Origin: Haliotis cracherodii
Lineage: Eukaryota
Assembly (NCBI RefSeq): GCF_022045235.1
Contig: NW_027266343.1
Location: 56,172,001-56,236,000 of the forward strand
DNA length: 64,000 nt
Direction of reading: 5' to 3'
Shown: in pieces, positions 24,972-60,910 of the stretch
Numbering within the stretch: the first letter of the stretch is position 1
Layout: the number at the start of each line of letters is the position of its first letter
The notes under the pieces: model-generated
The model's input: only the letters and a program-made list of their open reading frames with translations
What the model was told of the DNA's origin: nothing
The model's database searches: none
Position numbers and translations under genes: made by a program

Positions 24972-26512
24972 GACTCACTTTGTCGTCGTCTTGGAAGAGA
25001 TGTGAAGTTTGTATGCAGTGTCACAACAAAAATACCAGCTGTTTTAACAATGCAATACCTTTTGCAATATTGCGGAAATCTTTTTAAACGTCCCAGGCAC
25101 GCTCCCATATTTTCTTATTTTTACTATTACTAGACATAGAGCTAAACATGGGTCCATGACTAAATGACATCCTATTCATACGCCAAAATCTCCAACATCG
25201 AGTCATATTTATCCCCCATCTGGACACTAAGATTATCTCCATTAAATGTTTAGTAGAATACAGTAATGTGTTTTCAGCTCAGCTCACGCCCTCAGCGATA
25301 TGTTAGACAACCTTCAGGAGTTCATATTACGATAATGCGATCACTTACAAATACTGCAATGTCAGCACAAATTGTTTCACCGTGTAAAACTTCGCAGTGT
25401 GCCCCAATTACGTTTCTTTGTTTGTCAAAAGGCCTACACTACTTGAAGATTTCCTCCCACGTCAAGCTAACATGCCGTGCCAACAAGTATCATCAGAAAA
25501 AACGAACTGCCTTTTTTGTCAAAATAGCAAGTATTATCAATAATTCTTACAGCAGAGTATGTAACATGTGATATAAAAGCACGATTTTCGGTGCATTTTG
25601 AAAACATGTCATTTGTACATTAGGAAGATACAAGTTAAGACAGTAGCACGAGCGGCCAAACATCCAGGACTTGCCTTTTGAACTTCAATACAAATGGATA
25701 TTTGATGAAACTGTATTGCATATTTGTACAGTCATCATCAGTAAAATCAAACGTNNNNNNNNNNNNNNNNNNNNNNNNNNNNNNNNNNNNNNNNNNNNNN
25801 NNNNNNNNNNNNNNNNNNNNNNNNNNNNNNNNNNNNNNNNNNNNNNNNNNNNNNNNNNNNNNNNNNNNNNNNNNNNNNNNNNNNNNNNNNNNNNNNNNNN
25901 NNNNNNNNNNNNNNNNNNNNNNNNNNNNNNNNNNNNNNNNTTAAGCTGATGCAGAAATCTAAGCTATGTGTCGCAGTTTATGTTTCATACTGCGCAGTTA
26001 AAAAACATTGCGTGGTGAGTAACCGTTATAGGTCATCTCTGCTAGTGTCTATTGTGCTCTATAATGGTTGAAAGTTAACAAAATATCTGATTTATATCTC
26101 AAGAAATATGTGCACGTGTTTGTATCATACCTTATGTAAGTTCAGGAATATGTACATCCTTCCTTGTGGACTATTCACAACAAATGATGTTTTCCACACA
26201 ACTCAAGTTATTAACATGTCCTGCCTTCAAAGATTTTTGACTTATAATGACCCTATTCCTCGATGTGAAGACATACAGATGGAGCTTTCAAAAGCAATAT
26301 ATATTCACCCAGTCCACTTGGAACTCATGAGTTCAACCAACGTTGATGTACGCCATATTCATAATTTGTAGTTTATGTTGTACATATATGAAGTAAACAG
26401 ATGAGGGAAATAAGGATCAATGTTACACATATTTTATTGAACTACTCTTGGTTCTACATTAATGGATAGCGATAACGCTAGAGTTGTATCTTCGGCTTGT
26501 GTAAGCAGACTC

Positions 26513-26961
26513 TCAGTAGTAACCGTACCCCATACCTGAAAGAGAACACATAATACACATGTAATTAAATAGGATAAAATCAAGATGTGTTCCTTTCATT
26601 TAACGTGGGTTCAATTAAATGTTCATCTATGTTAATGGATTGACGGCTTAACTTAAGTGTAACGCCAAACATGATATTAATCAGATAACCTACCAATTCC
26701 TTTGCCAAGTCCAATTCCTCCGTACAGTCCTCCCATTCCACCATACAGTCCTCCAAATCCTCCGTACAGTCCTCCCATTCCTGCGTACAGACCTCCCATG
26801 CCTCCGTATAGACCTCCCATGCCTCCGTACAGGCTTCCTATACCATAGCCGCCATAGCCAAGGCCACCAAGGCCTCCGTACATGCCCATTCCGTAGCCAA
26901 TGGGTTTGGCGTAGGTAGCAACAGCCAGACAGGCAACAAGGACGACGATGATCTTCATCAT
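26513..26961 (-). CDS. A1: secreted Gly/Tyr/Met/Leu-rich structural protein, 96 aa; coding exons 26961-26694 and 26535-26513
   Basis: Signal peptide MMKIIVVLVACLAVATYA, then GGLYGGM repeats. GTAGGT donor and TTTCAG acceptor give C-terminus GIGMGYGYY*. AATAAA at 26438-26433. Non-coding exon 1 at ~27779-27734 with a GTGAGT donor. Confidence 0.9.
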
Positions 26962-27114
26962 TTTAAATAGCTGTCATAAAGAAATATTTTGAATTAGCGA
27001 TACATTTAAACAACCAGGTTAATGTATTTGCAAGACGGTATTTCATCCATACAACCGATTACAAAGGTATTATCAATTCAAATTATTATATATGTATTTT
27101 GTTTCTACGTTATT

Positions 27115-27355
27115 ATTTTGTTGTTGTTGTTTAACGCCGCATTCAGCAATATTCCAGCTGTATGACGGCTGTCTGTAATAATGGAGTCTGGACCCGACAA
27201 TCCGGTGATTGACATCATGAGCATCGATCCACTCAATTGGGTAACAATGACTTGCATCAAACAAGTCATCAAGGCTGACCACCCGATCCCGTTAGTCGCC
27301 TCAAGCATACTCGCCTTTTACGGCAAGTGTATTCTGCTCCGGATCGTCACGGCGG
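27115..27355 (-). mobile_element. SINE/bipartite non-autonomous element in A-gene intron 1 (also ~33920-34160, ~40725-40965, ~48075-48315)
   Basis: Minus strand 'gaggcgactaacgggatcgggtggtcag...ctggaatattgctgaatgcggcgttaaacaacaacaac'. Absent from the shorter intron 1 of A6. Confidence 0.8.
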
Positions 27356-27778
27356 ATAATGCACATATACACTATTTGAATGACTGAGAGGGTAAACATT
27401 CACGTGATTCATATATTTATAATACATGTTAATTAATCAGTAATGATATATTGGAAGTTACGCTTGAATGTTTCTTCACATGATCTCCGAATATGGAACA
27501 TTTGGCGAATATCGAAGCCAAATGTTGTACGCGTGATGGTTCAGGATGTAATAACTGAAATCCTTGTTTCAAAAATATTATGTGAACTTTGGCGAACTTT
27601 TTGTTGACGAAAAGAGAGTTGACCGTTGTAAAAAAGTTTGCCGACCTAAACTTAAATCATGGTTGATGTCACCATATGGATAAGCAAGTGATATTACTAC
27701 AACATTTACACAGTGTCAAATACAGATACTCACATTTAGGTACACAGATCGACTATTGGCAAATGCAGGAAAGTTCAG

Positions 27779-28079
27779 TGATGAGGTCACTCACCACACT
27801 CACGTATATATATATACCTGGTGTATTATGTATTACCTGTGATTGATTAGCCTTGGAATGGCTACTTCCGGGTGGGATCAATGACAAACGTCAATTAACT
27901 CTTCCTGAACAAGTAAAGGCGACATAAAATTACCAATTAACATGTGTTTTATCCTTGGGGCTTAAATGTGAGTAGTATTGGGTAACTGTACAAGGAAGAG
28001 TGGACATTGAGCCAGCGGGGTTAGACATTCCCGCAATCCCCGGCCTATATAAGAACACAGAAAAAGGCCGTAATCACCA
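27779..28079. promoter_or_regulatory. Bidirectional promoter of the A1/B1 pair
   Basis: Opposed TATA boxes at 27805-27816 and 28046-28052, each ~30 bp from an Inr-like site. Conserved blocks TGATTGAT 27840, ACTTCCGGGT 27864, CATGTGTTTTATCC 27941, TGTACAAGGAAG 27987. Confidence 0.75.
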
Positions 28080-28341
28080 GTTTCGCACAGCTCCATAGTG
28101 ACAAAGGTTAGTTGACTTGAATTCACATGATTTGTTTAAATTAATGAAGTCGAATTTGTAAATGTATTAAAATGTCAATAAACGAAGGCAAATACTGTTA
28201 ATTACATTTCTACCTCATGAAATTTCAAATCTGTTCAAAGGTTATTTGTTTTACAATAATCGTATTTCAAATAGAATCACTTGATGGTATTAATGTAACG
28301 AAATTAAGAAAGTATATATTCTTTCATGGCAGCTACTGAAA

Positions 28342-29559
28342 ATGATGAAGATTATCGTCGTCCTTGTTGCCTTTCTGGCTGTTGCTGCCTACGCTAAACC
28401 CACTGGCTACGGTATTGGCATGTACGGAGGCCTTGGAGGCCTTGGTGGCCTTGGCTATGGTGGCTATGGAATGGGAGGCCTGTATGGAGGCATGGGAGGC
28501 TTTGGCTATGGTGGCCTGGGAGGTCTGTACGGAGGTATGGGTCTTTACGGAGGCTTGGGAGGCCTGTACGGCGGCATGTATGGAGGAAAATACGGTGGCA
28601 TGTACGGAGGAATTGGACTTGGCAAAGGCATTGGTACGTTTTCACTGTAATTTAATTATGTTACCATGACATTAAGAGACATGTATGGTTGCATGAACAT
28701 TTAATAGACTTGTGTCATTTTTGCATATTGATTTGCTAATTTCAGTAACATGTAATCTGTCTGTAGGTTTGGAGATGGGAGGTGAGGTGTAGGGAGTGGG
28801 GGTGGGGGTGGGGGTGGGGGTGGGGGTGGGGGTAGGGTGGGAAGGTGGGGAGGCCTGTATGGAGGAATAGGCCTTTATCGAGACTTGGGAGGCATGCATT
28901 GAGGCATGTGTGTGTGTTGATCTGATGATAGGTAAATTGTGAGGAATGATCCCACTGTATGGTGGAAGGGGATATGTGAAGGTAAGGGTCTTTCCTGCAT
29001 ATTGATTTGCTAAATTTGAGTAACATGTACAAAGAACATGTATGGCATGCTGGGGTAGTACAGTAACCATGTCACTGACTCTGGCCAGATACAAGTAATA
29101 TTTCTCTCTTTCTAATTTCGCCACAGTTCTATTTAAATATATGCATGTTAGTGAACAATTCAGCCATATAGTGACAATCCAATCTTTCAAGGCACTGTTA
29201 TGACACATTATTGATTAAATCACAGCCATCGATGTACGTCTGTCCTACGACAAGCACGAGGTACTTATAACTGGGAACTAATTTTGACCGGGAATCACCA
29301 TCGAATCGAAGGAAAAAGAAAGAAGGACCATGAGTTTTGTATTGTTCTTTTTAAACTTGATACCATACTTCACATTACGGGAGCAATCTACAATACAGGG
29401 CTGAACCTTCCTTGCTATCAACGTAGTTCTCCCAAGGCGAGTACATGATTTGTTTTGATTAATAGTTGCAATTAACACTATTGTTGGTTAGACAATTACA
29501 TACGCATCCCTTTATTTATATAGAATGTATATTTCACTTCAGGTATGGGATACTATTGA
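28342..29559 (+). CDS. B1: secreted Gly/Tyr/Met/Leu-rich structural protein, 102 aa; coding exons 28342-28633 and 29543-29559
   Basis: Signal peptide MMKIIVVLVAFLAVAAYA, GGLYGGM repeats. GTACGT donor and CTTCAG acceptor give C-terminus GIGMGYY*. AATAAA at 29657. Non-coding exon 1 at ~28078-28106. Confidence 0.9.
28791..28854 (+). repeat. (GGGGGT)n G-quadruplex-forming tract in B-gene intron 2 (also ~35590-35657, ~42344-42388, ~49768-49807)
   Basis: Runs of five G separated by single T; copy number differs between units. Confidence 0.85.
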
Positions 29560-29994
29560 GGTTGGTGAGACGGCGCCTCAGATCTGCAACAACTTCAGCG
29601 CTGATCAAACAAACCTCTCAATGCTTCACGGAAGACAAATACTTTCTTCTCGGATCAATAAAGGACATTTCTACAATGCTTATTATTTTGTTGTTAGTTT
29701 CCGTGTTCCAATCATATAATTGTGACCCTTAATTTGCCTTTTACGCCTAATATAATCTTTTTTCTGTGGATAATCGAGAATAATTATCATCTGGCGTTGA
29801 CGTATTATATGTCACCCAAATCACTCACTGTAAGTTGGAGGCCAAATTGCATATTGTTTGTCTTGATACTGTCCAGAAGTAAAGAAATACTTACTTCCTT
29901 ACCAAGTATCATATCGACACAAATTCTGATCAACGTTTACCATAAACATGTCACCCTTTGCTGTAACGCCTCACACCAACTGAAGACCCTGGTT

Positions 29995-32410
29995 TCCATA
30001 TATGGAATCAGGCCATGGTCACGCGTTGCTATCATCATACTCTCATTTGGCTCGTTTGGAGCATGCTATGGCAATCCCCTTCTTAGCTATATTTTAGGCA
30101 TGACATGAATTCAGATTTAAAAGACTTTGTATTGTGAATATACTGCTGTTCCCAAATATACCCGAAACCAAAGCTAAACAGGATATATTTACAATTCGAA
30201 ACCCAGTTGCTTTTGCCTTTATTAGATGCCTGTAACATCATATTATAACACTTTTGTGGATAACGGGTGTCAGGCATAGAAATAATTAGCGTCAGTCCGT
30301 AACTAATACATATTGTGTAAGCATAGATAGATACATGTAATGGATATCGGCCGCACTCTCCACTAACGATTTGGTTAGGGGTAGATATCTTGACATCAAG
30401 AAAGCGCTTACACGCCAACATATGTACAGTTTCCATTTCATCATTTTGATACAACGCCTATACCTCTGATCCATAAAGCAATACTGGGGTTATTTCAATG
30501 TTAAATATTCTCGACAACAGTTCATGGCCAAATTTATCTACTTTACATTATGACTTCAAATGCAAAATACAGCTTTTTTCTTTTGCAAAACTGCATTTTC
30601 GAAGCGTCAGGGCCACGGAAGAAATTTCTAGAAAACATAACGCCTAAGAATTTGTAAAAAGATACACACTTGAGTTTAGTCTCTTTGTAAAACCATTTCC
30701 TGACAAATGCCCCCACCCCTGCCTTCTTGAACACCAAGAACGTTGTATCCAAATTAACATCTTATCAAAGATCAATGTAATATTTCTCCAAAACATTCAT
30801 TGGTTTCTGCAATCCCTCGATACTATCTGCTATAATGATAATATCATTTGCGAATAGCAAAATGAAACAAATGCGTCAGATCAAGGTACAACTGGATACC
30901 TTTCCTCAATTTGGAATAATAATTAATAAAAATGGAAAATAAAAAGGGACTTCAAACGAAACANNNNNNNNNNNNNNNNNNNNNNNNNNNNNNNNNNNNN
31001 NNNNNNNNNNNNNNNNNNNNNNNNNNNNNNNNNNNNNNNNNNNNNNNNNNNNNNNNNNNNNNNNNNNNNNNNNNNNNNNNNNNNNNNNNNNNNNNNNNNN
31101 NNNNNNNNNNNNNNNNNNNNNNNNNNNNNNNNNNNNNNNNNNNNNNNNNNNNNNNNNNNNNNNNNNNNNNNNNNNNNNNNNNNNNNNNNNNNNNNNNNNN
31201 NNNNNNNNGTTTTTGGTGTCGTATCCCATACAGGTAGACATATATCAGTCTTTGGATCTAGGCCACGGCCGTCGTCCTAGGCTATAACAGACAACCCCTG
31301 GGTATCCCCTCTGTCGCTCTCACTTGGGCGAAGAGGCATTCGTCCCTCGGCCCCATGGTATCGGCGTTTCGGTGATCCCCGGCGTGTAGTAGTGAATTCT
31401 GAATTCATCATTTTCAAGGACATAGATGTCGCCATTTATCACTAGTTTTTCATAGGAGAGATAAGTTGCCTTATCGCTTTTACATGCATCCAGCACGTGA
31501 GGGATAAGCCCCGCCCTTATCTTTCTAACTCTCTCTTCTATGCCATTAACTATTCCTCTTCTTTATCAACAAGAGTTTCCAATTTGGATATTCTTTCTTC
31601 AAATTCAACGTTTTCCGACCTCAGCTTAAAAAAATAATGATTGTATCAAACTTTCTATTAAGTTTACCAATTCCCGATCTGATAAGTTTTATCCGTTCAG
31701 TGGCATCATCCTGGTAGTGGATTAGAATCGCTGTTCCTCGAGTTAACATCGTGCTGAAGTAGACTATCTAGTTGCCTTACTCCACTCTCTCTTATTTGCC
31801 ATAAAATGTTCCTCTTCTTTATCAACAAGAGTTTTCAATTTGGATATTCTTTCTTCAAGCTCAACGTGTTCCGACTTGAACTTAAAAAAATAATGATTGT
31901 ATCAAACTTTCTTTTAAGTTTACCAATGTCAGATCTCATAAGTTTTAAACGCTCAGTGTCATCTTCCTGGTTGTGATTAGAATCGTTTTTCCTCTTGTTA
32001 ACGTCGTGCTGAAGTAGACTATACAGTTGCCTTACTTCGGGCACCCCAACTGACACTTCCCCGACCCCGCGGGCCTTGGTTTAACTTCAATTCAGAACAT
32101 ACTTGTAGGAGTCATGGTATGACGAGCTCAAATATTGTTTTCTTATTATTTGATAAACAAATGGATGTTGTTACAATTTATCATAGTTTGTTATAGGAGA
32201 AATAAGCTGCCATATATATTCGTTTTCACGTGCATCCATCACGTGAGGCATAAGCCCCGCCCTTATCTTTCGAACTATCTCTTCTATGCCATTGATTGTT
32301 CCTCTTCTTTTTCAACAAGATATTCTTTCTTCAAGCTCAACGTTTTCCGACCTCAACTTAAAAAATAATGACTGTTTAAAATTTTCTTTTACGGTTACCA
32401 TTGCCCGATC
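29995..32410 (-). mobile_element. Rearranged L2/CR1-group LINE relic in the spacer of unit 1 (RT fragment plus duplicated ORF1 pieces)
   Basis: RT-like FILLFANDIIIIADSIEGLQ, YKFLGVMFS and ACKRFLDVKISTPNQIVSGECGRYPL. ORF1-like DKATYLSYEKLVING and coiled-coil pieces repeated about three times. Confidence 0.75.
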
Positions 32411-33282
32411 TGATGTTGTGACAATTTATCTTATTAAAGGAAATGGGTACAGCGTATTGCATTATGTTGGGCAAGGTACAAGTGTACATGTTCTCCATCT
32501 TATGTGTATACGTAAACTACGTGGCGTCCTATTCGTGCAAAAAATACAAATGGATATTAGATGGAACTGTATACTTGGACAGTCATCGCTTTAAAAATGA
32601 AATGTTAATCTACAGTTAATAGCTCAACAGCATATAAAATATAATGATGATTATTTACGTGTCATATGAATAATGTTTATGTTGTATCTTTCGCCTTACC
32701 AACGATCCCTTTTTTTATCGATGAAGAAATTTGTCATAGTTTATGATTCATGCTGCGCAATTAAATTGTAGAATAAAATGACCACACATCAACCCTTACA
32801 AGTCAACTCTCGCGAATGTTTTTTGAGCTATGTATTATAGTTAAAAGAATACAGGATATCTAATATATATCTCCTTAAATATGTTTTCGTGAGTTTTTAT
32901 CAGACCACATGTAAGTTCAGGAATACGTATATCCTTCCTTGCAGATTATTCACAAAAGATGTTTTCCACACAACTCAAGTTATTAACATATCCTGCCTTC
33001 AAGGATTTCTGTGTTATAATGGCCCTATACCTCGATGTGAAGACATACAGATGGACATTTAAAAAGTAATATTAATTCACCCAGTCCACTTGGAACTCAT
33101 GAGCTCAACCAACGTTGATGTACGCCATATTCATAATTTGTAGTTTATGTTGTACATATATGAAGTAAACAGATGAGGGAAATGTGGATCAATGTTACAC
33201 ATATTTTATTGAACTACTCTTGGTTCTACATAAATGCATTGCGATAAAGCTAGAGTTGTATCTTTGGCTTGTGTAAGAAGAC

Positions 33283-33764
33283 TCAGTAGTAACCGTACCC
33301 CATACCTGAAAGAGAACACATAATACACATGTAATTAAATAGGATAAAATCAAGATGTGTTCCTTTCATTTAACGTGGGTTCAATTAAATGTTAATCTAT
33401 GTTGATGGATTGACGGCTTAACTTGAGTGTAACGCCAAACATGATATTAATCAGATAACCTACCAATTCCTTTGCCAAGTCCAATTCCTCCGTACATTCC
33501 ACCGTACAGTCCTCCCATTCCACCATACAGTCCTCCAAATCCTCCGTACAGTCCTCCCATTCCTCCGTACAGACCTCCCATGCCTCCGTACAGACCTCCC
33601 ATGCCTCCGTACAGACCTCCCATGCCTCCGTACAGGCCTCCTATACCATAGCCGCCATAGCCATGGCCACCAAGGCCTCCGTACATGCCCATTCCGTAGC
33701 CAATGGGTTTGGCGTAGGTAGCAACAGCCAGACAGGCAACAAGGACGACGATGATCTTCATCAT
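33283..33764 (-). CDS. A2: secreted Gly/Tyr/Met/Leu-rich protein, 107 aa; coding exons 33764-33464 and 33305-33283
   Basis: Same signal peptide, splice sites and GMGYGYY* end as A1. Confidence 0.9.
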
Positions 33765-34559
33765 TTTAAATAGCTGTCATAAAGAAATATTTTGAATTAG
33801 CGATACATTTAAACAACCAGGTTAATGTATTTGCAAGACGGTATTTCATCCATACAACCGATTACAAAGGTATTATCAATTCAAATTATTATATATGTAT
33901 TTTGTTTCTACGTTATTATTTTGTTGTTGTTGTTTAACGGCGCATTCAGCAATATTCCAGCTGTATGACGGCTGTCTGTAATAATGGAGTCTGGACCCGA
34001 CAATCCAGTGATTGACATCATGAGCATCGATCCACTCAATTGGGTAACGATGACATGCATCAAACAAGTCATCAAGGCTGACCACCCGATCCCGTTAGTC
34101 GCCTCAAGCATACTCGCCTTTTACGGCAAGTGTATTCTGCTCCGGATCGTCACGGCGGATAATGCACATATACACTATTTGAATGACTGAGAGGGTAAAC
34201 ATTCACGTGATTCATATATTTATAATACATGTTCATTAATCAGTAATGATATATTGGAAGTTACACTTGAATGTGTTCACATTATCTCCGAATATGGAAC
34301 ATTTGGCGAATATCGAAGCCAAATGTTGTACGCGTGATGGTTCAGGATGTAATAACTGAAATCCATGTTTCAAAAATATTTTTGTTGACGAAAAGAGAGT
34401 TGACCGTTGTAAAAAAATTTGCCGACCTAAACTTAAATCATGGTTGATGTCACCATATGGATAAGCAAGTGATATTACTACAACATTTACACAGTGTCAA
34501 ATACAGATACTCACATTTAGGTACACAGATCGACGATTTGCAAACGCAGGAAAGTTCAG

Positions 34560-34857
34560 TGATGTGGTCACTCACCACACTCACGTATATATACACCTGG
34601 TGTTATGTATTACCTGTGATTGATTAGCCTTGGAATGGCTACTTCCGGGTGGGATCAATGACAAACGTCAATTAACTCTTCCGGAACAAGTAAAGGCGAC
34701 ATAAAATTACCAATTAACATGTGTTTTATCCTTGGGGCTTAAATGTGAGTAGTATTGGGTAACTGTACAAGGAAGAGTGGACATTGAGCCAGCGGGGTTA
34801 GACATTCCCGCAATCCCCGGTTAATATAAGAACACAGAAAAAGGCCGTAATCACCAG
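34560..34857. promoter_or_regulatory. Bidirectional promoter of A2/B2
   Basis: TATATATA at 34586-34593, TAATATAAG at ~34822-34830, and the same conserved internal blocks. Confidence 0.7.
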
Positions 34858-35118
34858 TTTCGCACAGCTCCATAGTGACAAAGGTTAGTTGACTTGAATT
34901 CACATGATTTGTTTAAATTAATGAAGTCGAATTTGTAAATGTATCAAAATGTCAATAAACGAAGGCAAATACTGTTAATTACATTTCTACCTCATGAAAT
35001 TTCAAATCTGTTCAAAGGTTATTTGTTTTACAATAATCATATTTCAAATAGAATCACTTGATGGTATTAATGTAACGAAATTAAGAAAGTATATATTCTT
35101 TCATGGCAGCTACTGAAA

Positions 35119-36363
35119 ATGATGAAGATTATCGTCGTCCTTGTTGCCTTTCTGGCTGTTGCTGCCTACGCTAAACCCACTGGCTACGGTATTGGCATGT
35201 ACGGAGGCCTTGGAGGCCTTGGTGGCCTTGGCTATGGTGGCTATGGAATGGGAGGCCTGTATGGAGGCATGGGAGGCTTTGGCTATGGTGGCCTGGGAGG
35301 TCTGTACGGAGGTATGGGTCTTTACGGAGGCTTGGGAGGCCTGTACGGAGGAATGGGAGGCCTGTACGGCGGCATGTATGTAGGAAAATACGGTGGCATG
35401 TACGGAGGAATTGGACTTGGCAAAGGAATTGGTACGTTTTCACTGTAATTTAATTATGTTACCATGACATTAAGAGACATGTATGGTTGCATGAACATTT
35501 AATAGACTTGTGTCATTTTTGCATATTGATTTGCTAATTTCAGTAACATGTAATCTGTCTGTAGGTTTGGAGATGGGAGGTGAGGTGTAGGGAGTGGGGG
35601 TGGGGGTGGGGGTGGGGGTGGGGGTGGGGGTAGGGGTAGGGTGGGAAGGTGGGGAGGCCTGTATGGAGGAATAGGCCTTTATCGAGACTTGGGAGGCATG
35701 CATTGAGGCATGTGTGTGTGTTGATCTGATGATAGGTAAATTGTGAGGAATGATCCCACTGTATGGTGGAAGGGGATATGTGAAGGTAAGGGTCTTTCCT
35801 GCATATTGATTTGCTAAATTTGAGTAACATGTACAAAGAACATGTATGGCATGCTGGGGTAGTACAGTAACCATGTCACTGACTCTGGCCAGATACAAGT
35901 AATATTTCTCTCTTTCTAATTTCGCCACAGTTCTATTTAAATATATGCATGTTAGTGAACAATTCAGCCATATAGTGACAATCCAATCTTTCAAGGCACT
36001 GTTATGACACATTATTGATTAAATCACATCCATCGATGTACGTCTGTCCTACGACAAGCACGAGGTACTTATAACTGGGAACTAATTTTGACCGGGAATC
36101 ACCATCGAATCGAAGGAAAAAGAAAGAAGGACCATGAGTTTTGTATTGTTCTTTTTAAACTTGATACCATACTTCACATTACGGGAGCAATCTACAATAC
36201 AGGGCTGAACCTTCCTTGCTATCAACGTAGTTCTCCCAAGGCGAGTACATGATTTGTTTTGATTAATAGTTGCAATTAACACTATTGTTGGTTAGACAAT
36301 TACATACGCATCCCTTTATTTATATAGAATGTATATTTCACTTCAGGTATGGGATACTATTGA
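35119..36363 (+). CDS. B2: secreted Gly/Tyr/Met/Leu-rich protein, 109 aa; coding exons 35119-35431 and 36347-36363
   Basis: Same structure as B1, with one extra 21-nt repeat. Confidence 0.9.
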
Positions 36364-36799
36364 GGTTGGTGAGACGGCGCCTCAGATCTGCAACAACTTC
36401 AGCGCTGATCAAACAAACCTCTCAATGCTTCACGGAAGACAAATACTTTCTTCTCGGATCAATAAAGGACAATTCTACAATGCTTATTATTTTGTTGTTA
36501 GTTTCCGTGTTCCAATCATATAATTGTGACCCTTAATTTGCCTTTTACGCCTAATATAATCTTTTTTATGTGGATAATCGAGAATAATTATCATCTGGCG
36601 TTGACGTATTATATGTCACCCAAATCACTCACTGTAAGTTGGAGGCCAAATTGCATATTGTTTGTCTTGATACTTTCCAGAAGTAGAGAAATACTTACTT
36701 CCTTACCAAGTATCATATCGACACAAATTCTGATCAACGTTTACCATAAACATGTCACCCTTTGCTGTAACGCCTCACACCAACTGAAGACCCTGGTTT

Positions 36800-41683: not shown

Positions 41684-41868
41684 TTTCGCACAGCTCCATA
41701 GTGACAAAGGTTAGTTGACTTGAATTCACATGATTTGTTTAAATTAATGAAGTCGAATTTGTAAATGTATTAAAATGTCAATAAACGAAGGCAAATACTG
41801 TTAATTACATTTCTACCTCATGTAACGAAATTAAGAAAGTATATATTCTTTCATGGCAGCTACTGAAA

Positions 41869-48734: not shown

Positions 48735-49032
48735 TGATGTGGTCACTCACCACACTCACGTATATATACACCTGGTGTTATGTATTACCTGTGATTGATT
48801 AGCCTTGGAATGGCTACTTCCGGGTGGGATCAATGACAAACGTCAATTAACTCTTCCGGAACAAGTAAAGGCGACATAAAATTACCAATTAACATGTGTT
48901 TTATCCTTGGGGCTTAAATGTGAGTAGTATTGGGTAACTGTACAAGGAAGAGTGGACATTGAGCCAGCGGGGTTAGACATTCCCGCAATCCCCGGCCAAT
49001 ATATGAACACAGAAAAAGGCCGTAATCACCAG
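48735..49032. promoter_or_regulatory. Bidirectional promoter of A4/B4 (B-side TATA altered)
   Basis: TATATATA at 48761-48768; the B side reads CAATATATG at ~48997-49005. Confidence 0.65.
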
Positions 49033-49293
49033 TTTCGCACAGCTCCATAGTGACAAGGGTTAGTTGACTTGAATTCACATGATTTGTTTAAATTAATGAA
49101 GTCGAATTTGTAAATGTATTAAAATGTCAATAAACGAAGGCAAATACTGTTAATTACATTTCTACCTCATGAAATTTCAAATCTGTTCAAAGGTTATTTG
49201 TTTTACAATAATCGTATCTCAAATAGAATCACTTGATGGTATTAATGTAACGAAATTAAGAAAGTATATATTCTTTCATGGCAGCTACTGAAA

Positions 49294-50673: not shown

Positions 50674-51104
50674 GGTTGGTGAGACGGCGCCTCAGATCTG
50701 CAACAGCTTCAGCGCTGATCAAACAAACCTCTCAATGCTTCACGGAAGACAAATACTTTCTTCTCGGATCAATAAAGGACATTTCTACAATGCTTATTAT
50801 TTTGTTGTTAGTTTCCAGTGATCTAATCATATAATTTTGACCCTTAATTTGCCTTTTACGCCTAATATAATCTTTTTTCTGTGGATTATCGAGAATAATT
50901 ATCATCTGGCGTTGACGTATTATATGTCACCCAAATCACTCACTGTAAGTTGGAGGCCAAATTGCATATTGTTTGTCTTGATACTGTTCAGAAGTAGAGA
51001 AATACTTACTTCCTTACCAAGTATCATATCGACACAAATTCTGATCAACGTTTACCATAAACATTTCACCCTTTGCTGTAACGCCTCACACCAATTGAAG
51101 ACCC

Positions 51105-52754
51105 TGGTTTCCATATATGGAATCAGGCCATGGTCACGCGTTGCTCTCATCATACTCTCATTTGGCCCGTTTGGAGCATGCTATGGCAATCCCCTTCTTA
51201 GCTATATTTTAGACATGACATGAATTCAGATTTAAAAGACTTTGTATTGTGAATATACTGCTGTTCCCAAATATACCCGAAACCAAAGCTAAACAGGATA
51301 TATTTACAATTCGAAACCCAGTTGCTTTTGCCTTTAATAGATGCCTGTAACATCATATTGTAACACTTTTGTGGATAACGGGTGTCAGACATAGAAATAA
51401 TTAGCGTCAGCCCGTAACTAATACATATTGTGTAAGCATAGATAGATACATGTAATGGATATCGGCCGCACTCTCCACTAACGATGTGGTTAGGGGTAGA
51501 TATCTTGACATCAAGAAAGCGCTTACACGCCAACATATGTACAGTTTCCATTTCATCATTTTGATACAACGCCTATACCTCTGATCCATAAAGCAATATT
51601 GGGGTTATTTCAATGTTAAATATTCTCGACAACAGTTCATGGCCAAATTTATCTACTTTACATTATGACTTCAAATGCAAAATACAGCTTTTTTCTTTTG
51701 CAAAACTGCATTTTCGAAGCGTCTGGGCCACGGAAGAAATTTCTAGAAAACATAACGCCTAAGAATTTGTAAAAAGATACACACTTGAGTTTAGTCCCTT
51801 TGTAAAACCATTTCCTGACAAATGCCCCCACCCCTGCCTTCTTGAACACCAAGAACGTTGTATCCAAATTAACATCTTATCAAAGATCAATGTAATATTT
51901 CTCCAAAACATTCATTGGTTTCTGCAATCCCTCGATACTATCTGCTATAATGATAATATCATTTGCGAATAGCAAAATGAAACAAATGCGTCAAATCAGG
52001 GTACAACTGGATACCTTTCCTCAATTTCGAATAATAATTAATAAAAATGGAAAATAAAAAGGGACTTCAAACGAAACACTGNNNNNNNNNNNNNNNNNNN
52101 NNNNNNNNNNNNNNNNNNNNNNNNNNNNNNNNNNNNNNNNNNNNNNNNNNNNNNNNNNNNNNNNNNNNNNNNNNNNNNNNNNNNNNNNNNNNNNNNNNNN
52201 NNNNNNNNNNNNNNNNNNNNNNNNNNNNNNNNNNNNNNNNNNNNNNNNNNNNNNNNNNNNNNGTTTTGGGTGTCGTATCCCATACAGGTAGACATATATC
52301 AGTCTTTGGATCTAGACCACGGCCGTCGTCCTAGGCTATAACAGACAACCCCTGGGTATCCCCTCTGTCGCTCTCACTTGGGCGAAAAGGCGTTCGTCCC
52401 TCGGCCCCATGGTATCGGCGTTTCGGTGATCCCCGGCATGTAGTAGTGAATTCTGAATTCATCATTTTCAAGAACATAGATGTCGCCATTTATAACTAGT
52501 TTTTCATAGGAGAGATAAGCTGCCTTATCACTTTTACATGCATCCAGCACGTGAGGGATAAGCCCCGCCCTTATCTTTCTCTCTCTTCTATGCCATTAAC
52601 TATTCCTCTTCTTTATCAACAAGAGTTTCCAATTTGGATATTCTTTCTTCAAATTCAACGTTTTCCGACCTCAGCTTAAAAAAATAATGATTGTATCAAA
52701 CTTTCTATTAAGTTTACCAATTCCCGATCTGATGAGTTTTATCCGTTCAGTGGC
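51105..52754 (-). mobile_element. LINE relic in the spacer of unit 4, cut off at 52754
   Basis: Copy of the spacer LINE that breaks at 'ccgttcagtggc' and joins directly onto promoter sequence. Confidence 0.75.
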
Positions 52755-52995
52755 TGTGATTGATTTGCCTGGGAGTGGCTACTTCCAGGTGGGTTGAATA
52801 AACATCTATCAACTCTTCCTGAACAAGTAAAGATGACATAAAATTACCAATTAACATGTGTTTTATCCTTGGGGCTTACATGTCAGTAGAATTGGGTAAG
52901 TGTACAAGGAAGTGTGGACATTGCGCCAGTGGGGTAAGACATTCCTGCAATCCCCGGCCTATAAAAGCAAACACAAAAAGGCCTTTATCACCAGT
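52755..52995 (+). promoter_or_regulatory. Promoter of B5, lacking the A-side TATA and the A gene
   Basis: TGATTGAT 52757, ACTTCCAGGT 52781, CATGTGTTTTATCC, TGTACAAGGAAGTG, canonical TATAAAA 52960-52966. Exon-1 donor GTAAGT at 53021. Confidence 0.7.
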
Positions 52996-53311
52996 TTCGC
53001 ACAGCTCCATAGTGACAACGGTAAGTTGGCTTGTATTTTCATTATTTGTTAAAAATAATAAGGTCGTATTTGTAAATGTATTGAAATGTCAAGAAACAAA
53101 GGAACCGAAAGTGATTACGACTAATTTCTGCTGACAACCATCACAATTTGTGATACATTGCACATACTGTTTGTTACATTTCCGTCTCATGAGATTGAAA
53201 TCTATCTAAACATTCCTTAATTTACAATAATCGTATTTCAAACCGAATCGCTGGAAGGCCTTTATGTAATGAGATTAAGAAGTTAAGTATTCTTTCATGG
53301 CAGCTACTAAA

Positions 53312-54383
53312 ATGATGAAGATTATCGTCGTCCTTGTTGCCTGTCTGGCTGTTGCTGCCTACGCCAATCCCACAGGCTACGGTATTGGCATGTACGGAGG
53401 CCTTGGTGGCCTTGGCTATGGCGGCTATGGTATGGGAGGCCTTTACGGAGGTATGGGAGGTCTGTACGGAGGTATGGGAGGTCTGTACGGAGGTATGGGT
53501 CTTTACGGAGGCTTGGGAGGCCTGTATGGAGGAATGGGAGGCCTGTATGGAGGAATGGGAGGCCTGTACAGCGGCATGTATGGATGAAAATACGGCGGCA
53601 TGTACGGGGGAATTGGATTTGGAAAAGGAATTGGTAAGTTTCTTGAGTACACTGTATATTGTACACCAGAATAATTGGCTATGTCATGGGCATGAACGTG
53701 TGCCTTGTTGACCAGATACCAGTGACACGCGACAGTTATATTTGATTAGTCACGACGAAAGGATCGTGTTGCAACCAGGTGAAACAAGTATTGGAGTCAC
53801 ATGTTTACATTCACACCCAGTTCTGGAATGTATTCAGATCTTGGTGTATGTAATTCTTTAAATATCTTTCCCCCATCTTCATATTGTTATAGGAATCACA
53901 TTCAGACTAGGCTCCATGTCTGCCGTTGCTGTCGTGGCAGTTATGAATGAGTTAGTGAATGTTATTGAAAATTTGACGACATTTGACGACAATCCTGTAG
54001 TTCAAGGCTTTAGCAACATTATTAATGTAGGAAGTTCGGCTGTTATCAAACATTATTGGCTAGAGCACAATAGCCCTTACGACAAACCACAGGGTACTTG
54101 CAACTTGGAAATAGTTTTTCCTGGGATAGTTCGCATCGATTCGAAAGGAAACATACAAGTACCGCGCCATTTGTATTGTTACTTTTAATCTTTGATAAAA
54201 TCCGGGCACCATACGGGATTATTCTACTATATAGGGCTGAACCGTTCTTGATATCACCGTAATTATTCCAAGTCAAGTAAACAATTTCTTTTGAATAGTA
54301 GTTGCAATTTACGACATATTGAATAAACACTCTTTTATTTATATCATATGTGTCTTTTTACTTCAGGCATTGGATACTATTGA
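53312..54383 (+). pseudogene. B5: diverged B-type gene with an in-frame nonsense codon (GGA>TGA at 53585-53587); exons 53312-53633 and 54367-54383
   Basis: Reads ...GMYG*KYGGMYGGIGFGKGIG|IGYY*. Splice sites are intact. It would be 112 aa if read through and 91 aa if truncated. Confidence 0.75.
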
Positions 54384-58952: not shown

Positions 58953-59625
58953 TCAATAGTGACCGTATCCCATGCCTAAAAGAGACAACAAAATACACAA
59001 TTATAAGATAACAACGCACTTGAGAAAAATACTTCTGCCTAAGGAGTTCCCCCAAAACACAAATTGTTTAATAAAAGTCTGACAGAAGCCGTTATTTAGA
59101 AGCCGACATTGCATGTATTGTGAGAAGAAAATAATGTGTCGCTAATCGCACCCTCCCTTCGCAACCCCTTCACAAATGTTACATGTTACTAGAATCAGCA
59201 AAATCAATATGCCAAAATCACAAACGTGACTTCCCTTTTCGAATTTCTGATGTCCATGCAATCACACTGGTCTCCCATTGCAATTGGATCAGTCTCATAA
59301 TATACACAGACAACTTACCAATTCCTTTGCCGAGTCCAATTCCTCCGTACATGCCACCGTACAGTCCTCCCATTCCTCCGTACAGGCCTCCCAAGCCTCC
59401 GTAAAGACCCATACCTCCATACAGACCTCCCATGCCTCCGTACAGACCTCCCATGCCTCCGTACAGGCCTCCAATGCCACCATACAGGCCTCCCATACCT
59501 AAGCCGCCATAGCCACCATAGCCAAGGCCACCAAGGCCTCCGTACATGCCAATACCGTAGCCAATGGGTTTGGCGTAGGCAGAAACAGCCAGACAGGCAA
59601 TAAGGACGACGATAATCTTCATCAT
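58953..59625 (-). CDS. A6: diverged A-type secreted Gly/Tyr/Met/Leu-rich protein, 109 aa; coding exons 59625-59319 and 58975-58953
   Basis: Signal peptide MMKIIVVLIACLAVSAYA. GTAAGT donor and TTTAG acceptor give GMGYGHY*. AATAAA at 58888-58883. Exon-1 donor GTGAGT at 60020-60015. TATATAAA at 60100-60093. Confidence 0.9.
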
Positions 59626-60064
59626 TCTCAGTAGCTGTCAATAAAAACGAAATAGGTTTTGCGATAGAAATAGACTTGCTGCATGTTGTAATTGAATTTG
59701 AAAAATAATGTTAAACGTGGATGTACACCTTAAACATGTATTACCAAAGTGATGTTCCGTGTAGTTGATAATTTAGAATGTAAGAAATAAAACAAAAATG
59801 TTTTATCATTTACTATGAACTCTTAGCTGGTGTAAAGATTAAGGTTAAACATAAAGAGTTATTCTATTAAACGATTTAAGAAATAGATAGGGTGGATCGA
59901 CGAATCAGTTATTGATTGGGTAAAACGGTTGGTCCTCACAGGTGAAATATTTACGAGGGATGCGGAGACCAAGTAGCCTATAATGGCAGACTAATTAGTG
60001 TTATTCACGTTGGTACTCACAGTTAGGTGTACGGAGTGACTAGGTTGTCAATGCAGAGAAGTTC

Positions 60065-60345
60065 AGTGAAGTTTACGCTCTTAACATTCACGTTTATATA
60101 CGCGGCGTGTTATGTGTAGCCTGTGATTGATTTGCCTGGGAATGGCTACTTCCGGGTGAGATCAAGGGCACACACCAATTAACACACCCTGAACATGAAC
60201 GGGTGACATAACATCACCGATGAGCATGTGTTTTATCCATATGCTTAGGGCTTAAATGTGAGAAGTATTGGATAACTGTACAAGGAAGTGTGGAAAGTGT
60301 ACCAGTGGGGACGTCCCCACAACCCCCGGCCAGAATAAACACATT
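60065..60345. promoter_or_regulatory. Bidirectional-type promoter of A6 with a degenerate B-side TATA
   Basis: TGATTGAT 60124, ACTTCCGGGT 60148, CATGTGTTTTATCC 60225, TGTACAAGGAAGTG 60277. The B-side TATA position reads 'ggccagaataaac'. Confidence 0.7.
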
Positions 60346-60727
60346 ATAGAAGTCTAACGCCATATTAATGATCAACCTGAAAGTCGCCAAGATGATGGGA
60401 CTTGAATTTGTACCATTTTGTTAAAACAAAACAAATGTAAACGTAGTTCTAACTGAAGCAGTACACCATAGGCAGGTTAAGAGATGATTTACCACGTTTA
60501 ACAATTTGTTCACATTTTGAAACTACCAACTACGCCTTTGAGCCAGATAATAGAAATACAAAACATTAATAACACGGTCTATTTAAGGAGGAATCCTACC
60601 GACTTTAAAACCTGCATATCATCGTCAAATGAAAACAAAATTTATGTTGTTTGCTCACGAATGGCTCTACAAAACGATTACTAGATATTGGAAGTCTATT
60701 GCTATCAAATATAAAAAGAAATCGTTC

Positions 60728-60910
60728 CGGAGGAATGGGACTTATGTTCGGAGGCATGGGAGGTATGTAAGTCGGCATAGGAGGTCTATATAGAGGCATA
60801 TAATTATGTACATATGCATATGGGTATGTACAGATGCATGAGAAATATATACAAAACATGGGAGGTATGTGCATAGGGATGTTGGGTCCGTATAGAGGCA
60901 TGGGAGGCTT
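60728..60910 (+). pseudogene. Remnant of B6, the partner of A6
   Basis: Degenerate repeat sequence GGMGLMFGGMGGM*VGIGGLYRGI*...RGMGGL at the position expected for a B gene. No signal-peptide sequence is recognisable. Confidence 0.7.

What the first reader, a model, noticed from the sequence alone, without database searches (positions are those of the whole stretch)
26430..60910. Chorion-locus-like array of head-to-head gene pairs encoding secreted GGLYGGM-repeat proteins in a probable mollusc
Seen in sequence: six units arranged [A1- B1+][A2- B2+][A3- B3+][A4- B4+][lost B5+][A6- psiB6+]. Each gene has a non-coding exon 1, a signal-peptide plus repeat exon and a tiny terminal exon. Each pair shares ~300 bp between predicted start sites. 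Established knowledge: silkmoth chorion A/B genes are tandem divergent pairs on short shared promoters and encode Gly/Tyr-rich (GYGGL-type) structural proteins. Inference: this is an independently evolved dosage-amplified, co-expressed system for a molluscan extracellular structure such as periostracum/shell matrix, operculum, radula or egg coat. Unlike chorion A/B, the two partners are close paralogs, so the pair probably arose by an inverted duplication before tandem amplification.
Basis: partly seen in the sequence, partly recalled or inferred. Interest (0 to 1): 0.88.

Follow-up and report, generated by a model that had tools for sequence, protein, structure and literature searches.

The report
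Abalone glycine-rich gene-pair tandem array
A black abalone chromosome carries a real, expressed tandem array of back-to-back gene pairs for small secreted glycine/tyrosine/leucine/methionine-rich proteins. It is the one head-to-head cluster of an abalone-only family of more than 100 genes whose described relative is made at the shell-forming mantle edge, so it is a variation on a known theme.

Summary
Window 26.3-60.9 kb holds four 6.8-7.4 kb units, 97.8-99.7% identical. Each has a minus-strand gene (A) and a plus-strand gene (B) head to head. Older copies follow: B5 (now with an in-frame TGA), A6 and a decayed psiB6. Each gene has a predicted non-coding exon 1, an exon 2 (signal peptide plus GGLYGGM-type repeats) and a phase-1 micro-exon (GMGYGYY* or GMGYY*). 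Transcript contigs from public runs confirm both exon 2/3 junctions and very strong exon-restricted coverage. No RNA contig lies in the 322 bp between the genes.

The genome is Haliotis cracherodii. The locus is not a lone chorion-like invention. The same family has at least 102 copies here, mostly in four head-to-tail arrays of 15-30 genes on three scaffolds, and it was detected only in Haliotis. Its closest described relative is Has-tsfgr1, a shell-field and mantle-edge glycine-rich protein. NCBI auto-names members "shematrin-like" or "ctenidin-like".

What is special here is the compact divergent pair. A keeps the family promoter and B has a locus-specific one. The 208-bp core between them is better conserved than the flanks beside it. 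A shell or periostracum structural role is inferred, not shown. This is a new member of a known kind, of moderate interest.

The parts
26303..33074 (.). Unit 1 of the tandem array (A1 + shared promoter + B1 + spacer)
   Evidence: Self-BLAST unit boundaries. 99.0-99.7% identical to unit 2.
33075..39880 (.). Unit 2 (A2/B2)
39881..47251 (.). Unit 3 (A3/B3). It is longer because of a 747-bp spacer duplication and a longer exon-2-like relic in B intron 2. It also has a 70-bp deletion in B3 intron 1.
47252..52754 (.). Unit 4 (A4/B4). Its spacer is cut short at 52754, where the sequence jumps into the promoter of B5, so the A5 gene is deleted.
   Evidence: 31209-31704 aligns to 52263-52754, then 27837-28188 aligns to 52754-53102
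26694..26970 (-). A1 exon 2: 9 nt of 5'UTR, ATG at 26961, signal peptide, then Gly/Tyr/Leu/Met heptad repeats ending GLGKGI-G (phase 1)
   Evidence: ORF. Donor and acceptor. Intron 26536-26693 confirmed by a contig joint in run X2.
26415..26535 (-). A1 terminal exon: coding 26513-26535 (GMGYGYY*), then the 3'UTR with AATAAA near 26438
   Evidence: An RNA-run contig covers 26445-26536. The H. rubra protein XP_046565582 ends with the same tail.
27734..27786 (-). A1 predicted non-coding exon 1, with donor aaat|gtgagta
   Evidence: The TATA box, exon and donor are conserved with the head-to-tail array genes. Unspliced RNA-run contigs cross the donor and stop at 27763. The start site itself is a prediction.
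27805..28053 (.). Shared divergent promoter. It holds the A TATA box (27805-27816, minus strand), a conserved 208-bp core (27838-28045) and the B TATA box (28046-28053, plus strand).
   Evidence: The core is 83-90% identical to the old copies B5 and A6/psiB6, against 64-69% (A6/psiB6) or no real alignment (B5) in the A-side zones and 46% (A6/psiB6) on the B TATA/exon 1 side; only B5's B side keeps 87%. No or almost no RNA-run depth lies in 27764-28085.
28076..28106 (+). B1 predicted non-coding exon 1, with donor aaag|gttagt
   Evidence: The TATA box lies 30 nt upstream. One low-depth RNA-run contig starts at 28086 and runs into intron 1. This promoter, exon 1 and intron 1 occur only at this locus in the genome. 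Prediction only.
28333..28633 (+). B1 exon 2 (ATG at 28342)
   Evidence: Exon-restricted depth of 1e5 in the RNA-like runs.
29543..29680 (+). B1 terminal exon: coding 29543-29559 (GMGYY*), then the 3'UTR with AATAAA at 29657
   Evidence: Loose ends at 28636 continue with the micro-exon letters (one row, 9 reads, run X1). The 3'UTR depth is 800-29,000 in X1-X3.
33283..33773 (-). A2 coding exons (exon 2 33464-33773, micro-exon 33283-33305)
35110..36363 (+). B2 coding exons (exon 2 35110-35431, micro-exon 36347-36363)
40089..40579 (-). A3 coding exons (exon 2 40270-40579, micro-exon 40089-40111). The exon-2 product is identical to that of A2.
41860..43254 (+). B3 coding exons (exon 2 41860-42169, micro-exon 43238-43254)
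47460..47929 (-). A4 coding exons (exon 2 47641-47929, micro-exon 47460-47482)
49285..50673 (+). B4 coding exons (exon 2 49285-49609, micro-exon 50657-50673). Its TATA box carries two substitutions (AATATATG).
52754..54383 (+). B5, an older and diverged copy without an A partner. The promoter core is kept. Exon 2 is 53312-53633 with an in-frame TGA at 53585-53587. The micro-exon at 54367-54383 reads GIGYY*. No AATAAA lies nearby. Probably a pseudogene.
58953..59634 (-). A6, an older copy that looks intact. Exon 2 is 59319-59634. The micro-exon at 58953-58975 reads GMGYGHY*. AATAAA lies 87 nt after the micro-exon start.
60014..60900 (+). A6/psiB6 intergenic core (60014-60331) and a decayed Gly-rich relic of B6 with no ATG or signal peptide (about 60.7-60.9 kb)
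30964..31208 (.). N run in the spacer of unit 1. Homologous N runs lie at 37757-38014, 44663-44886 and 52082-52262.
   Evidence: All sit at the same unit position, outside every gene model. Not filled.

Best explanation
Shown. This is a recently amplified tandem array in Haliotis cracherodii. Each 6.8-kb unit carries two divergently transcribed, three-exon paralogs, A and B. Each encodes a roughly 95-110-residue precursor: a 18-residue signal peptide, a mature chain of 51-54% Gly, 14-16% Tyr, 11-14% Leu and 8-10% Met with no acidic residues, built of GGLYGGM-type heptads, and a Tyr-tipped tail added by a phase-1 micro-exon. Both gene types are spliced as modelled and are present in transcript assemblies. 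The array belongs to a Haliotis-restricted family of at least 102 genes that otherwise lie in head-to-tail arrays.

Inferred history. An inverted duplication of a family member placed B back to back with A. A kept the family's promoter: a conserved ETS-like/PBX-like block, the TATA box, exon 1 and its donor. B acquired its own TATA box and first exon about 290 bp away. The 208-bp core between them is conserved and probably acts as a shared bidirectional control region. The pair was then multiplied by unequal crossing-over, which raises dosage.

Inferred function. By analogy with the relative Has-tsfgr1, the proteins are secreted by shell-field or mantle-edge cells. There they are likely to form an insoluble framework, possibly cross-linked through tyrosine, in periostracum or outer shell layers.
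For: Array and gene models.

Splicing and expression. A contig joint skips 26533-26690 (cut +3), GT..AG on the minus strand. Loose ends at 28636 spell the B micro-exon. Exon-2 word depth is 1e5-6e5 against 10-270 in introns. A- and B-specific 3' ends both occur in runs X2 and X3; only the B type occurs in X1. These 3'UTRs found no match in loci sampled from the other clusters.

Species. The length of scaffold C1 equals that of the contig carrying NCBI XP_071095146 from H. cracherodii.

Family size and layout: (a 20-nt signal-peptide motif occurs 102 times, and 0 times in the control). Every sampled locus that holds a complete gene has the same exon 2 plus micro-exon design.

Homologs were found only in Haliotis, in both a word-indexed search and an exhaustive HMMER search.

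Promoters. The A promoter is homologous to the array promoters (score 49 against 16 +/- 2 for shuffles). The B promoter is locus-specific. The core is conserved at 83-90%. A and B separate on the tree.

Functional analogy. Has-tsfgr1 has a 17-residue signal peptide, more than 52% Gly, Gly/Leu/Tyr repeats and a C-terminal Tyr. [quoted passage not shown]
Against: - No tissue or strand information is available for the runs. They are only guessed to be RNA, and contigs cannot show starts or ends.
- Exon 1 of both genes and both start sites are predictions.
- Exon-2 depth is family-wide, because contigs were laid at 90% likeness or more.
- A-type 3' ends are absent from run X1, so strict co-expression is not shown.
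- The protein family does not appear in the text of the two abalone shell proteome papers I searched. With only 1-3 Lys and no Arg it would, however, give almost no tryptic peptides.
- The link to Has-tsfgr1 rests on the paper's description, not on an alignment.
- Four N runs prevent proof that the four units are contiguous.
Confidence: 0.6

Rival explanations
1. The genes and the array are as described, but the product builds a different secreted structure: radular or jaw matrix, larval operculum, or pedal/adhesive or mucus scaffold rather than shell or periostracum.
For: No tissue data were obtained (run descriptions are coded). The GGLYGG motif is otherwise known from the Gly-rich modules of squid sucker ring-teeth proteins, a non-mineralised hard tissue. 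The family does not appear in the text of the two abalone shell proteome papers searched.
Against: The only characterised relative by description, Has-tsfgr1, is restricted to the shell field and mantle edge. The proteomic silence is explained by the near absence of tryptic sites.
Confidence: 0.2
2. The proteins are glycine/tyrosine-rich antimicrobial or mucosal-defence peptides, like nematode NLP-29/31, spider ctenidins and acanthoscurrins. Such peptides are also encoded by small clustered genes.
For: NCBI auto-names members 'ctenidin-1-like' and 'neuropeptide-like protein 31'. The products are small, secreted, Cys-free and weakly cationic. Gly-rich mucus peptides are reported in a land snail (titles only).
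Against: Net charge is only about +1 to +3 over 80-90 residues, with no Arg. The names come from compositional similarity, and no alignment-based homolog was found outside Haliotis. More than 100 near-identical copies and a Tyr-tipped tail fit a bulk material better than an effector (inference).
Confidence: 0.08
3. The head-to-head arrangement is an accident of an inverted duplication. A and B are driven by two independent promoters and need not be co-regulated, so the resemblance to chorion is only geometric.
For: The A and B promoters, first exons and UTRs are not alike. Run X1 shows B-type but no A-type 3' ends. About 90% of the family works in head-to-tail arrays without a partner.
Against: The 208-bp core between the two TATA boxes is the best-conserved non-coding stretch when young and old copies are compared (83-90%). 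Both transcripts are present in runs X2 and X3. Contigs show presence, not absence.
Confidence: 0.25
4. The number of near-identical units is inflated by the assembly, either through haplotype copies or through scaffolding across the N runs. The real locus would then have one or two young pairs plus the old copies.
For: Each young unit is bounded by an N run at the same position. Units differ by only 0.3-2.2%, which overlaps plausible heterozygosity.
Against: Four distinct unit sequences with different repeat numbers (A of 94, 105, 105 and 98 residues; B of 102, 109, 119 and 110) cannot come from two haplotypes of one pair. The stretch after the last N run holds spacer, B5, A6 and psiB6 together. 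The N runs vary in length (181-258) and begin and end at homologous bases, as masking would. Other arrays of the family show no N in the 7-10 kb pieces sampled.
Confidence: 0.1

Closest known systems
[quoted passage not shown]
   Same: Same genus. About 100-115 residues, a 17-residue signal peptide, more than 50% Gly with Leu/Tyr repeats, and a C-terminus ending in Tyr. No relatives were recognisable outside the lineage. In this genome the C18 cluster fits its description: a 17-residue signal peptide, 15 residues before the repeats, and GGYGLGL motifs. That cluster matches the window protein at E = 2e-7.
   Different: The window genes use GGLYGGM heptads with 8-10% Met and end in GMGY(GY)Y, not GYKGY. 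The genomic organisation of Has-tsfgr1 was not described. I could not align the published sequence because it is held only as a figure, so family membership is inferred.
Shematrin / KRMP families of pearl oysters (Yano et al. 2006; tandem clusters in the Pinctada fucata genome, PMC4759782)
   Same: Lineage-restricted, secreted, Gly-rich repeat proteins with a C-terminal Tyr. They are encoded by tandemly duplicated genes and expressed at the mantle edge. NCBI auto-names H. cracherodii members 'shematrin-like protein 2'.
   Different: No sequence homology was detectable. The basic RKKKY-type C-terminal motif is absent. The Pinctada paper reports five shematrin genes on two scaffolds, against at least 102 copies here. 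No divergent-pair unit is mentioned for shematrins in the passages I read.
Silkmoth chorion A/B gene pairs
   Same: Tandem repeats of divergently transcribed pairs separated by about 300 bp of shared 5' flank. The products are Gly/Tyr-rich secreted structural proteins. The chorion facts come from established knowledge and were not re-checked here.
   Different: A and B here are close paralogs (78% DNA identity in exon 2) rather than two branches of a superfamily. There is no protein homology and no Pfam hit. Most of the abalone family is not paired. Developmental co-regulation has not been demonstrated.
Suckerins (squid sucker ring-teeth proteins), Gly/Tyr/Leu-rich modules
   Same: The GGLYGG/GLYGGYG-type motif. 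A suckerin octapeptide of this kind self-assembles into beta-sheet gels (PMC9999432). Both are Cys-free, load-bearing protein designs.
   Different: Suckerins alternate these modules with Ala/His-rich beta-sheet modules, which are absent here. They are cephalopod proteins of several hundred residues. Homology is neither shown nor likely.
Mammalian high-glycine/tyrosine keratin-associated protein (KRTAP) clusters and nematode nlp-29 cluster
   Same: Many small Gly/Tyr-rich genes in tandem clusters, used for bulk production (own knowledge, not tested).
   Different: Different lineages and structures. Those genes are single-exon or differently built, and there is no sequence relationship.

Membership tests
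Haliotis tsfgr1-like glycine-rich family (operational: the >=102-copy family of this genome) | Conserved signal peptide M(M)K(I/V)..LVACLAVA..A followed by (K/E)P.GYG/GLYG | tested here: met
   The 20-nt motif that encodes it occurs 102 times in the genome and 0 times in the control.
Haliotis tsfgr1-like glycine-rich family (operational: the >=102-copy family of this genome) | Exon 2 ends in G(L/F)GKG(I) in phase 1 and is followed by a micro-exon that ends in Tyr-stop | tested here: met
   Junctions are confirmed in transcript contigs and by the H. rubra and H. asinina RefSeq protein tails.
Haliotis tsfgr1-like glycine-rich family (operational: the >=102-copy family of this genome) | Family promoter block + TATA + about 55-nt non-coding exon 1 with donor AA(A/C)T|GT(G/A)AGTA | tested here: met
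   Met for the A genes. Not met for the B genes, whose promoter is locus-specific.
Has-tsfgr1 (published protein) | Direct sequence similarity to DW986319 | not testable with these tools
   The sequence is printed only in a figure, so only the verbal description could be compared.
Has-tsfgr1 (published protein) | Expression at the shell field edge and the anterior outer mantle fold | not testable with these tools
   Run tissues are coded. The only reads call is used.
Shematrin (Pinctada) | Detectable sequence homology to shematrins | tested here: not met
   A word-indexed search and an exhaustive HMMER search returned only Haliotis proteins plus unrelated low-complexity hits. Low complexity limits sensitivity.
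Shematrin (Pinctada) | Basic C-terminal motif (R/K)KKY ending in Tyr | tested here: not met
   The tails are GMGYGYY or GMGYY: the Tyr end is present, the basic residues are absent.
Silkmoth chorion locus architecture | Divergent pairs on a shared 5' flank of about 300 bp, repeated in tandem | tested here: met
   The start sites are predicted, not mapped.
Silkmoth chorion locus architecture | The partners belong to two distinct families (A and B), and the proteins carry the chorion central domain | tested here: not met
   The partners are 78% identical in exon 2. There is no Pfam match at all.
Silkmoth chorion locus architecture | Coordinated expression of the two partners | tested here: inconclusive
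   Both 3' ends are present in runs X2 and X3. Only the B type is seen in X1. Contigs cannot quantify.
Suckerin | Alternation of Ala/His-rich modules with Gly/Tyr/Leu-rich modules | tested here: not met
   The mature chains have 0-1 Ala and 0-1 His. Only the Gly-rich motif is shared.

The most novel reading that the evidence does not exclude
Abalones run a gene family of more than 100 copies in several arrays for a methionine-bearing, suckerin-like GGLYGGM heptad polymer. In one array they have convergently evolved a chorion-style unit. There the ancestral promoter's enhancer core is shared, in both directions, with a partner gene that built a new TATA box and first exon. Two tail variants (GYGYY and GYY) would then be co-secreted in fixed proportion to make a two-component, tyrosine-cross-linked material of the shell's outer organic layer.
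Probability: 0.15. Interest if true: 0.65.

Novelty: new member of a known kind. Interest (0 to 1): 0.4.

Why it matters
The locus gives a clean gene model and a genome-wide map (at least 102 copies in five arrays) for a family that public annotation handles badly. Some RefSeq models fuse two or three neighbouring copies and carry names borrowed from spiders, nematodes and oysters.

It identifies a very abundant, almost trypsin-proof protein class that shell proteomics would miss. It also offers a compact natural bidirectional promoter (about 250 bp, with a conserved 208-bp core) that could be tested for mantle-specific expression.

For biomaterials work, it is a gastropod protein made almost entirely of the self-assembling GLYGG-type motif known from squid ring teeth, with methionine added.

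It is not a new principle. Tandem amplification of lineage-specific Gly-rich matrix genes and divergent pair arrays are both known.

Tried and rejected
I therefore could not inspect the H. rubra and H. asinina loci to see whether the head-to-head pair is conserved.
- BLASTP between the window protein and the C18 (tsfgr1-like) protein gave nothing because of composition masking. The link rests on the HMMER match.
- Pfam gave no family for the protein or for the spacer ORFs.
- The ESM Atlas gave only a weak look-alike (0.76, arthropod cuticle protein), treated as compositional.
- A homology search with the C18 exon gave only unrelated low-complexity hits.
- Literature searches for the motifs GLYGGM, GMGGLY and GLGKGIG found no paper. 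GGLYGG was found only in squid ring-teeth work and other unrelated papers.
- Searches for ctenidin, shematrin or glycine-rich with abalone found no description of these arrays.
- The abalone shell proteome papers do not mention the family in the text I searched.
- The H. asinina mantle EST table lists DW986319 only as a novel secreted EST.
- Linkage to tyrosinase genes was rejected: the tyrosinase cluster is on another scaffold.
- An origin of the B promoter from the family promoter or from a transposon was tested. There is no significant alignment to the family promoter, apart from a 12-nt copy of the ancestral donor motif (1 of 300 shuffles reached its score). There are no copies elsewhere in the genome.
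- The spliced (joined) protein was never assembled or searched.
- I did not fold the protein (low complexity, no informative alignment) and did not run complex prediction (no binding claim is made).
- The N runs were not filled or looked up.

Full report
**1. Observation**

A six-frame scan finds ten ORFs that begin MMKIIVVL and continue with GGLYGGM-type repeats. Repeat finding and self-BLAST show four units of 6772, 6806 and 7371 bp plus a truncated 5.5-kb unit. Their substitution identity is 97.8-99.7%. More diverged copies follow:
- B5, 78-88% identical, without an A partner. The sequence jumps from the spacer into the promoter at 52754.
- A6, and a decayed relic psiB6.

**2. Gene models**

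Every exon 2 is preceded by a polypyrimidine-AG acceptor 9 nt before the ATG. Every exon 2 ends GLGKGI-G|GT in phase 1.
- A genes: a micro-exon lies 158 nt downstream and reads GMGYGYY-stop. The pattern matches 5 times against 0.00 expected.
- B genes: a micro-exon lies 909-1067 nt downstream and reads GMGYY-stop, with AATAAA 114 nt further on.

I laid contigs of four public runs on 26300-29900. Three of the runs behave as RNA:
- Summed word depth is 1e5-6e5 on exon 2 and 800-29,000 on the 3' exons, against 10-270 in introns. The fourth run is flat, like DNA.
- One contig joint skips exactly the A intron, with GT..AG on the minus strand.
- Loose ends at 28636 continue with the letters of the B micro-exon.

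The RefSeq protein of H. rubra (XP_046565582) ends with the spliced A-type tail.

Exon-2 depth cannot be assigned to this locus, because contigs were laid at 90% likeness or more and the family is large. The A and B 3'UTRs, however, found no match in loci sampled from the other clusters, or in each other. Both A and B are therefore expressed in runs X2 and X3, and B in X1.

**3. First exons and the shared promoter**

The A upstream region aligns with the upstream regions of distant family members (local score 49 against 16 +/- 2 for shuffles). The aligned part consists of:
- a block of the form CCGGAAGT-GCCA...AATCAATCAC;
- a TATA run (27805-27816 on the minus strand);
- about 55 nt of exon, and a conserved donor AAAT|GTGAGTA at 27734/27733.

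B has its own TATAAG box at 28046-28053 and a donor at 28106/28107. This promoter, first exon and first intron occur nowhere else in the genome except at B1-B5 and psiB6, and they do not align with the family promoter. The predicted start sites are about 290 bp apart.

In the RNA-like runs, unspliced low-depth contigs cross the A donor and stop at 27763. One contig starts at 28086 and runs into B intron 1. The bins between show no or almost no depth, while the DNA-like run covers that stretch. Contigs cannot prove starts, so this is supportive only.

Aligning the intergenic region of young units with the old copies shows a conserved core. Positions 27838-28045 are 90% (B5) and 83% (A6/psiB6) identical to unit 1. 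The A exon 1 and A TATA zones are 69% and 64% identical in A6/psiB6, and mostly missing in B5. The B TATA and exon 1 zone of psiB6 is 46% identical. This pattern is what a shared regulatory module would leave.

**4. N runs**

The four N runs inside the finding start and end at homologous bases of the spacer in all four units. They lie about 1.3 kb beyond the B poly(A) signal. No exon or intron of any model touches them.

Their unequal lengths (245, 258, 224 and 181) and their homologous edges would fit masking as well as a sequence-dependent assembly break. I cannot tell which, and I did not try to fill them.

Without them, contiguity of the four young units rests on scaffolding. Two points argue that the array is real:
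- Four different unit sequences, with different repeat numbers, cannot be two haplotypes of one pair.
- The last stretch holds spacer, B5, A6 and psiB6 together.

**5. Whose genome, and how big is the family**

Earlier notes of this scan call the genome an abalone. The exhaustive protein search returned XP_071095146 of Haliotis cracherodii. Its contig length of 89,134,964 equals that of scaffold C1 of this assembly, and its sequence matches the C1 copies.

Searching the whole genome with exon 2 gave 86 and 137 matches. A 20-nt motif from the signal-peptide coding region occurs 102 times and 0 times in the control. The copies lie as follows:

| Location | Copies | Strand | Period |
|---|---|---|---|
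| C80:51.27-51.39 Mb | 29 | all plus | about 3.99 kb |
| C2:36.71-36.84 Mb | about 30 | all plus | 4.24 kb |
| C1:76.40-76.46 Mb | 15 | 14 plus, 1 minus at the edge | 4.2 kb |
| C1:77.47-77.54 Mb | 16 | all minus | 3.6 kb |
| The window | 10 | 5 minus, 5 plus | 6.8-7.4 kb units |
| C18 cluster, degraded inverted pair at C80:51.03 Mb, singletons | few | mixed | - |

Every sampled locus that holds a complete gene has the same exon 2 plus Tyr-ending micro-exon design. The window is the only array of compact head-to-head pairs.

Outside Haliotis (H. cracherodii, H. rubra, H. asinina) neither search found a credible relative. RefSeq models on C1 fuse two or three neighbouring copies. The family is named variously shematrin-like, spidroin-like, ctenidin-like, glycine-rich protein-like and neuropeptide-like protein 31.

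**6. History**

A and B resemble each other only in exon 2, about 75 bp of intron 1 and the micro-exon, at 78% identity.

On a tree built from the 5' part (90 nt upstream plus 102 nt of coding sequence), the window genes form a group apart from the head-to-tail subfamily, with 100/100 support. A1-4 plus A6 separate from B1-5 in 98% of bootstrap trees, although that branch itself is weak at 77/62.

The conserved core is present in the old A6/psiB6 pair and at B5. Together this supports the following order:
1. An inverted duplication.
2. Early duplications of the pair.
3. Loss of A5 and decay of B6.
4. A recent fourfold amplification.

A 12-nt exact copy of the ancestral exon-1 donor motif lies in B orientation at 27962-27973, 73 nt upstream of the B TATA box. 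Only 1 of 300 shuffles reached its alignment score, and it is largely conserved in the old copies. It may be a relic of B's original first exon. This is a lead, not a finding.

**7. What the product is likely to do**

The exon-2 part of the mature chain has 51-54% Gly, 14-16% Tyr, 11-14% Leu and 8-10% Met. It has 1-2 Lys in that part, no Asp, Glu, Arg or Cys, and at most one Ser or Thr. The DNA repeat period is 21 bp. No Pfam family matches.

The best described relative is Has-tsfgr1 of H. asinina (PMC2034539). Its features are:
- 114 residues with a 17-residue signal peptide;
- more than 52% Gly, in Gly/Leu/Tyr repeats;
- a tail that ends in Tyr;
- expression at the growing edge of the trochophore shell field, along the veliger mantle edge and at the anterior edge of the juvenile outer mantle fold, with down-regulation in larger animals.

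The C18 cluster of this genome fits that description and matches the window protein at E = 2e-7.

I infer a secreted framework protein of the outer organic or prismatic part of the shell or of the periostracum. Tyrosine would allow oxidative cross-linking. Tyrosinase and peroxidase are abundant in abalone shell matrix according to PMC6003135. The GLYGG-type motif is known to self-assemble in squid ring-teeth peptides.

This functional step is inference. Radula, jaw, operculum and mucus, or an antimicrobial role, are not excluded. The family does not appear in the text of the two shell proteome papers I searched, and it would yield almost no tryptic peptides.

**8. Comparison with the known, and verdict**

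Tandem duplication of lineage-specific Gly-rich matrix genes is established for pearl-oyster shematrins (PMC4759782). Divergent pair arrays are classic for silkmoth chorion (own knowledge).

This locus shares the chorion geometry but fails the tests of chorion membership that could be decided here: the partners are not two distinct families and there is no chorion domain. It fails shematrin membership on sequence and on the basic tail. I file it as a new member of a known kind.

The genuinely new points are:
- the scale of the family (at least 102 copies);
- the single array that turned into pairs with a conserved bidirectional core;
- correct gene models.

I found no paper that describes these arrays, within the limits of the searchable library.

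**9. Limits**

- One reads call only, on contigs, with coded organisms and no tissue information.
All searches used exon 2 by reference.

Noticed in passing
G000 C80:51.27-51.39 Mb, C2:36.71-36.84 Mb, C1:76.40-76.46 Mb, C1:77.47-77.54 Mb (loci L011-L039): Four large head-to-tail arrays (15-30 copies each, periods 3.6-4.2 kb) of sister subfamilies of the same Gly/Tyr/Leu/Met protein. Many copies have identical exon-2 products. Together with the window there are at least 102 copies.
   Followed up: partly
G000 C1:77.47-77.54 Mb; proteins P0004, P0009, P0010: RefSeq models of H. cracherodii ('shematrin-like protein 2', 'spidroin-1-like') are chimeras that read through two or three neighbouring tandem copies. 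The family needs re-annotation.
   Followed up: partly
window 27026-27388 (and the same place in units 2-4): A very high-copy repeat lies inside A intron 1, probably SINE-like. Summed word depth reaches 1.6 million in the DNA-like run and 1e5 in the RNA-like runs, with hundreds of loose ends at its borders.
   Followed up: no
window 28790-28900, longer in units 3 and 4 (42439-42606, 49858-50002): B intron 2 holds a (GGGGGT)n run followed by a decayed exon-2-like stretch that still translates to GGLYGGIGLY. It is a relic of a partial internal duplication of exon 2.
   Followed up: partly
window 27962-27973: A 12-nt exact copy of the family's exon-1 donor motif (TAAAT|GTGAGTA) lies in B orientation, 73 nt upstream of the B TATA box. 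It is largely conserved in the old copies. It may be a relic of B's original first exon.
   Followed up: partly
window 31434-32414 (and homologous spacer parts; one extra 747-bp copy block in unit 3): A satellite of about 256 bp, 3-4 copies at 78-88% identity, lies in each spacer just after the N run. Beside it are an ORF fragment at 30083-30454 (minus strand) and another at 31320-31496 (minus strand). Neither has a Pfam match, and they may be degraded retroelement pieces.
   Followed up: partly
window 970-5350: A LINE with endonuclease, reverse transcriptase and a weak RNase H match (Pfam) lies at the left end of the window.
   Followed up: partly
window 11573-13760: About 2 kb of 8-12-nt microsatellite with extreme GC skew (+0.56) and long artefactual ORFs. 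An N run (12235-12602) lies inside it.
   Followed up: no
L033 (G000 C80:51,027,258-51,030,236): A second head-to-head pair of family members (subfamily 2). The ATGs are 2.3 kb apart, and both copies carry damaging substitutions. It is probably a dead inverted duplicate, which shows that inverted duplication happened more than once in this family.
   Followed up: partly
G000 C78:7.547-7.625 Mb: A tandem cluster of at least 12 tyrosinase-domain genes, all on the minus strand. It is not linked to any of the Gly-rich arrays.
   Followed up: no
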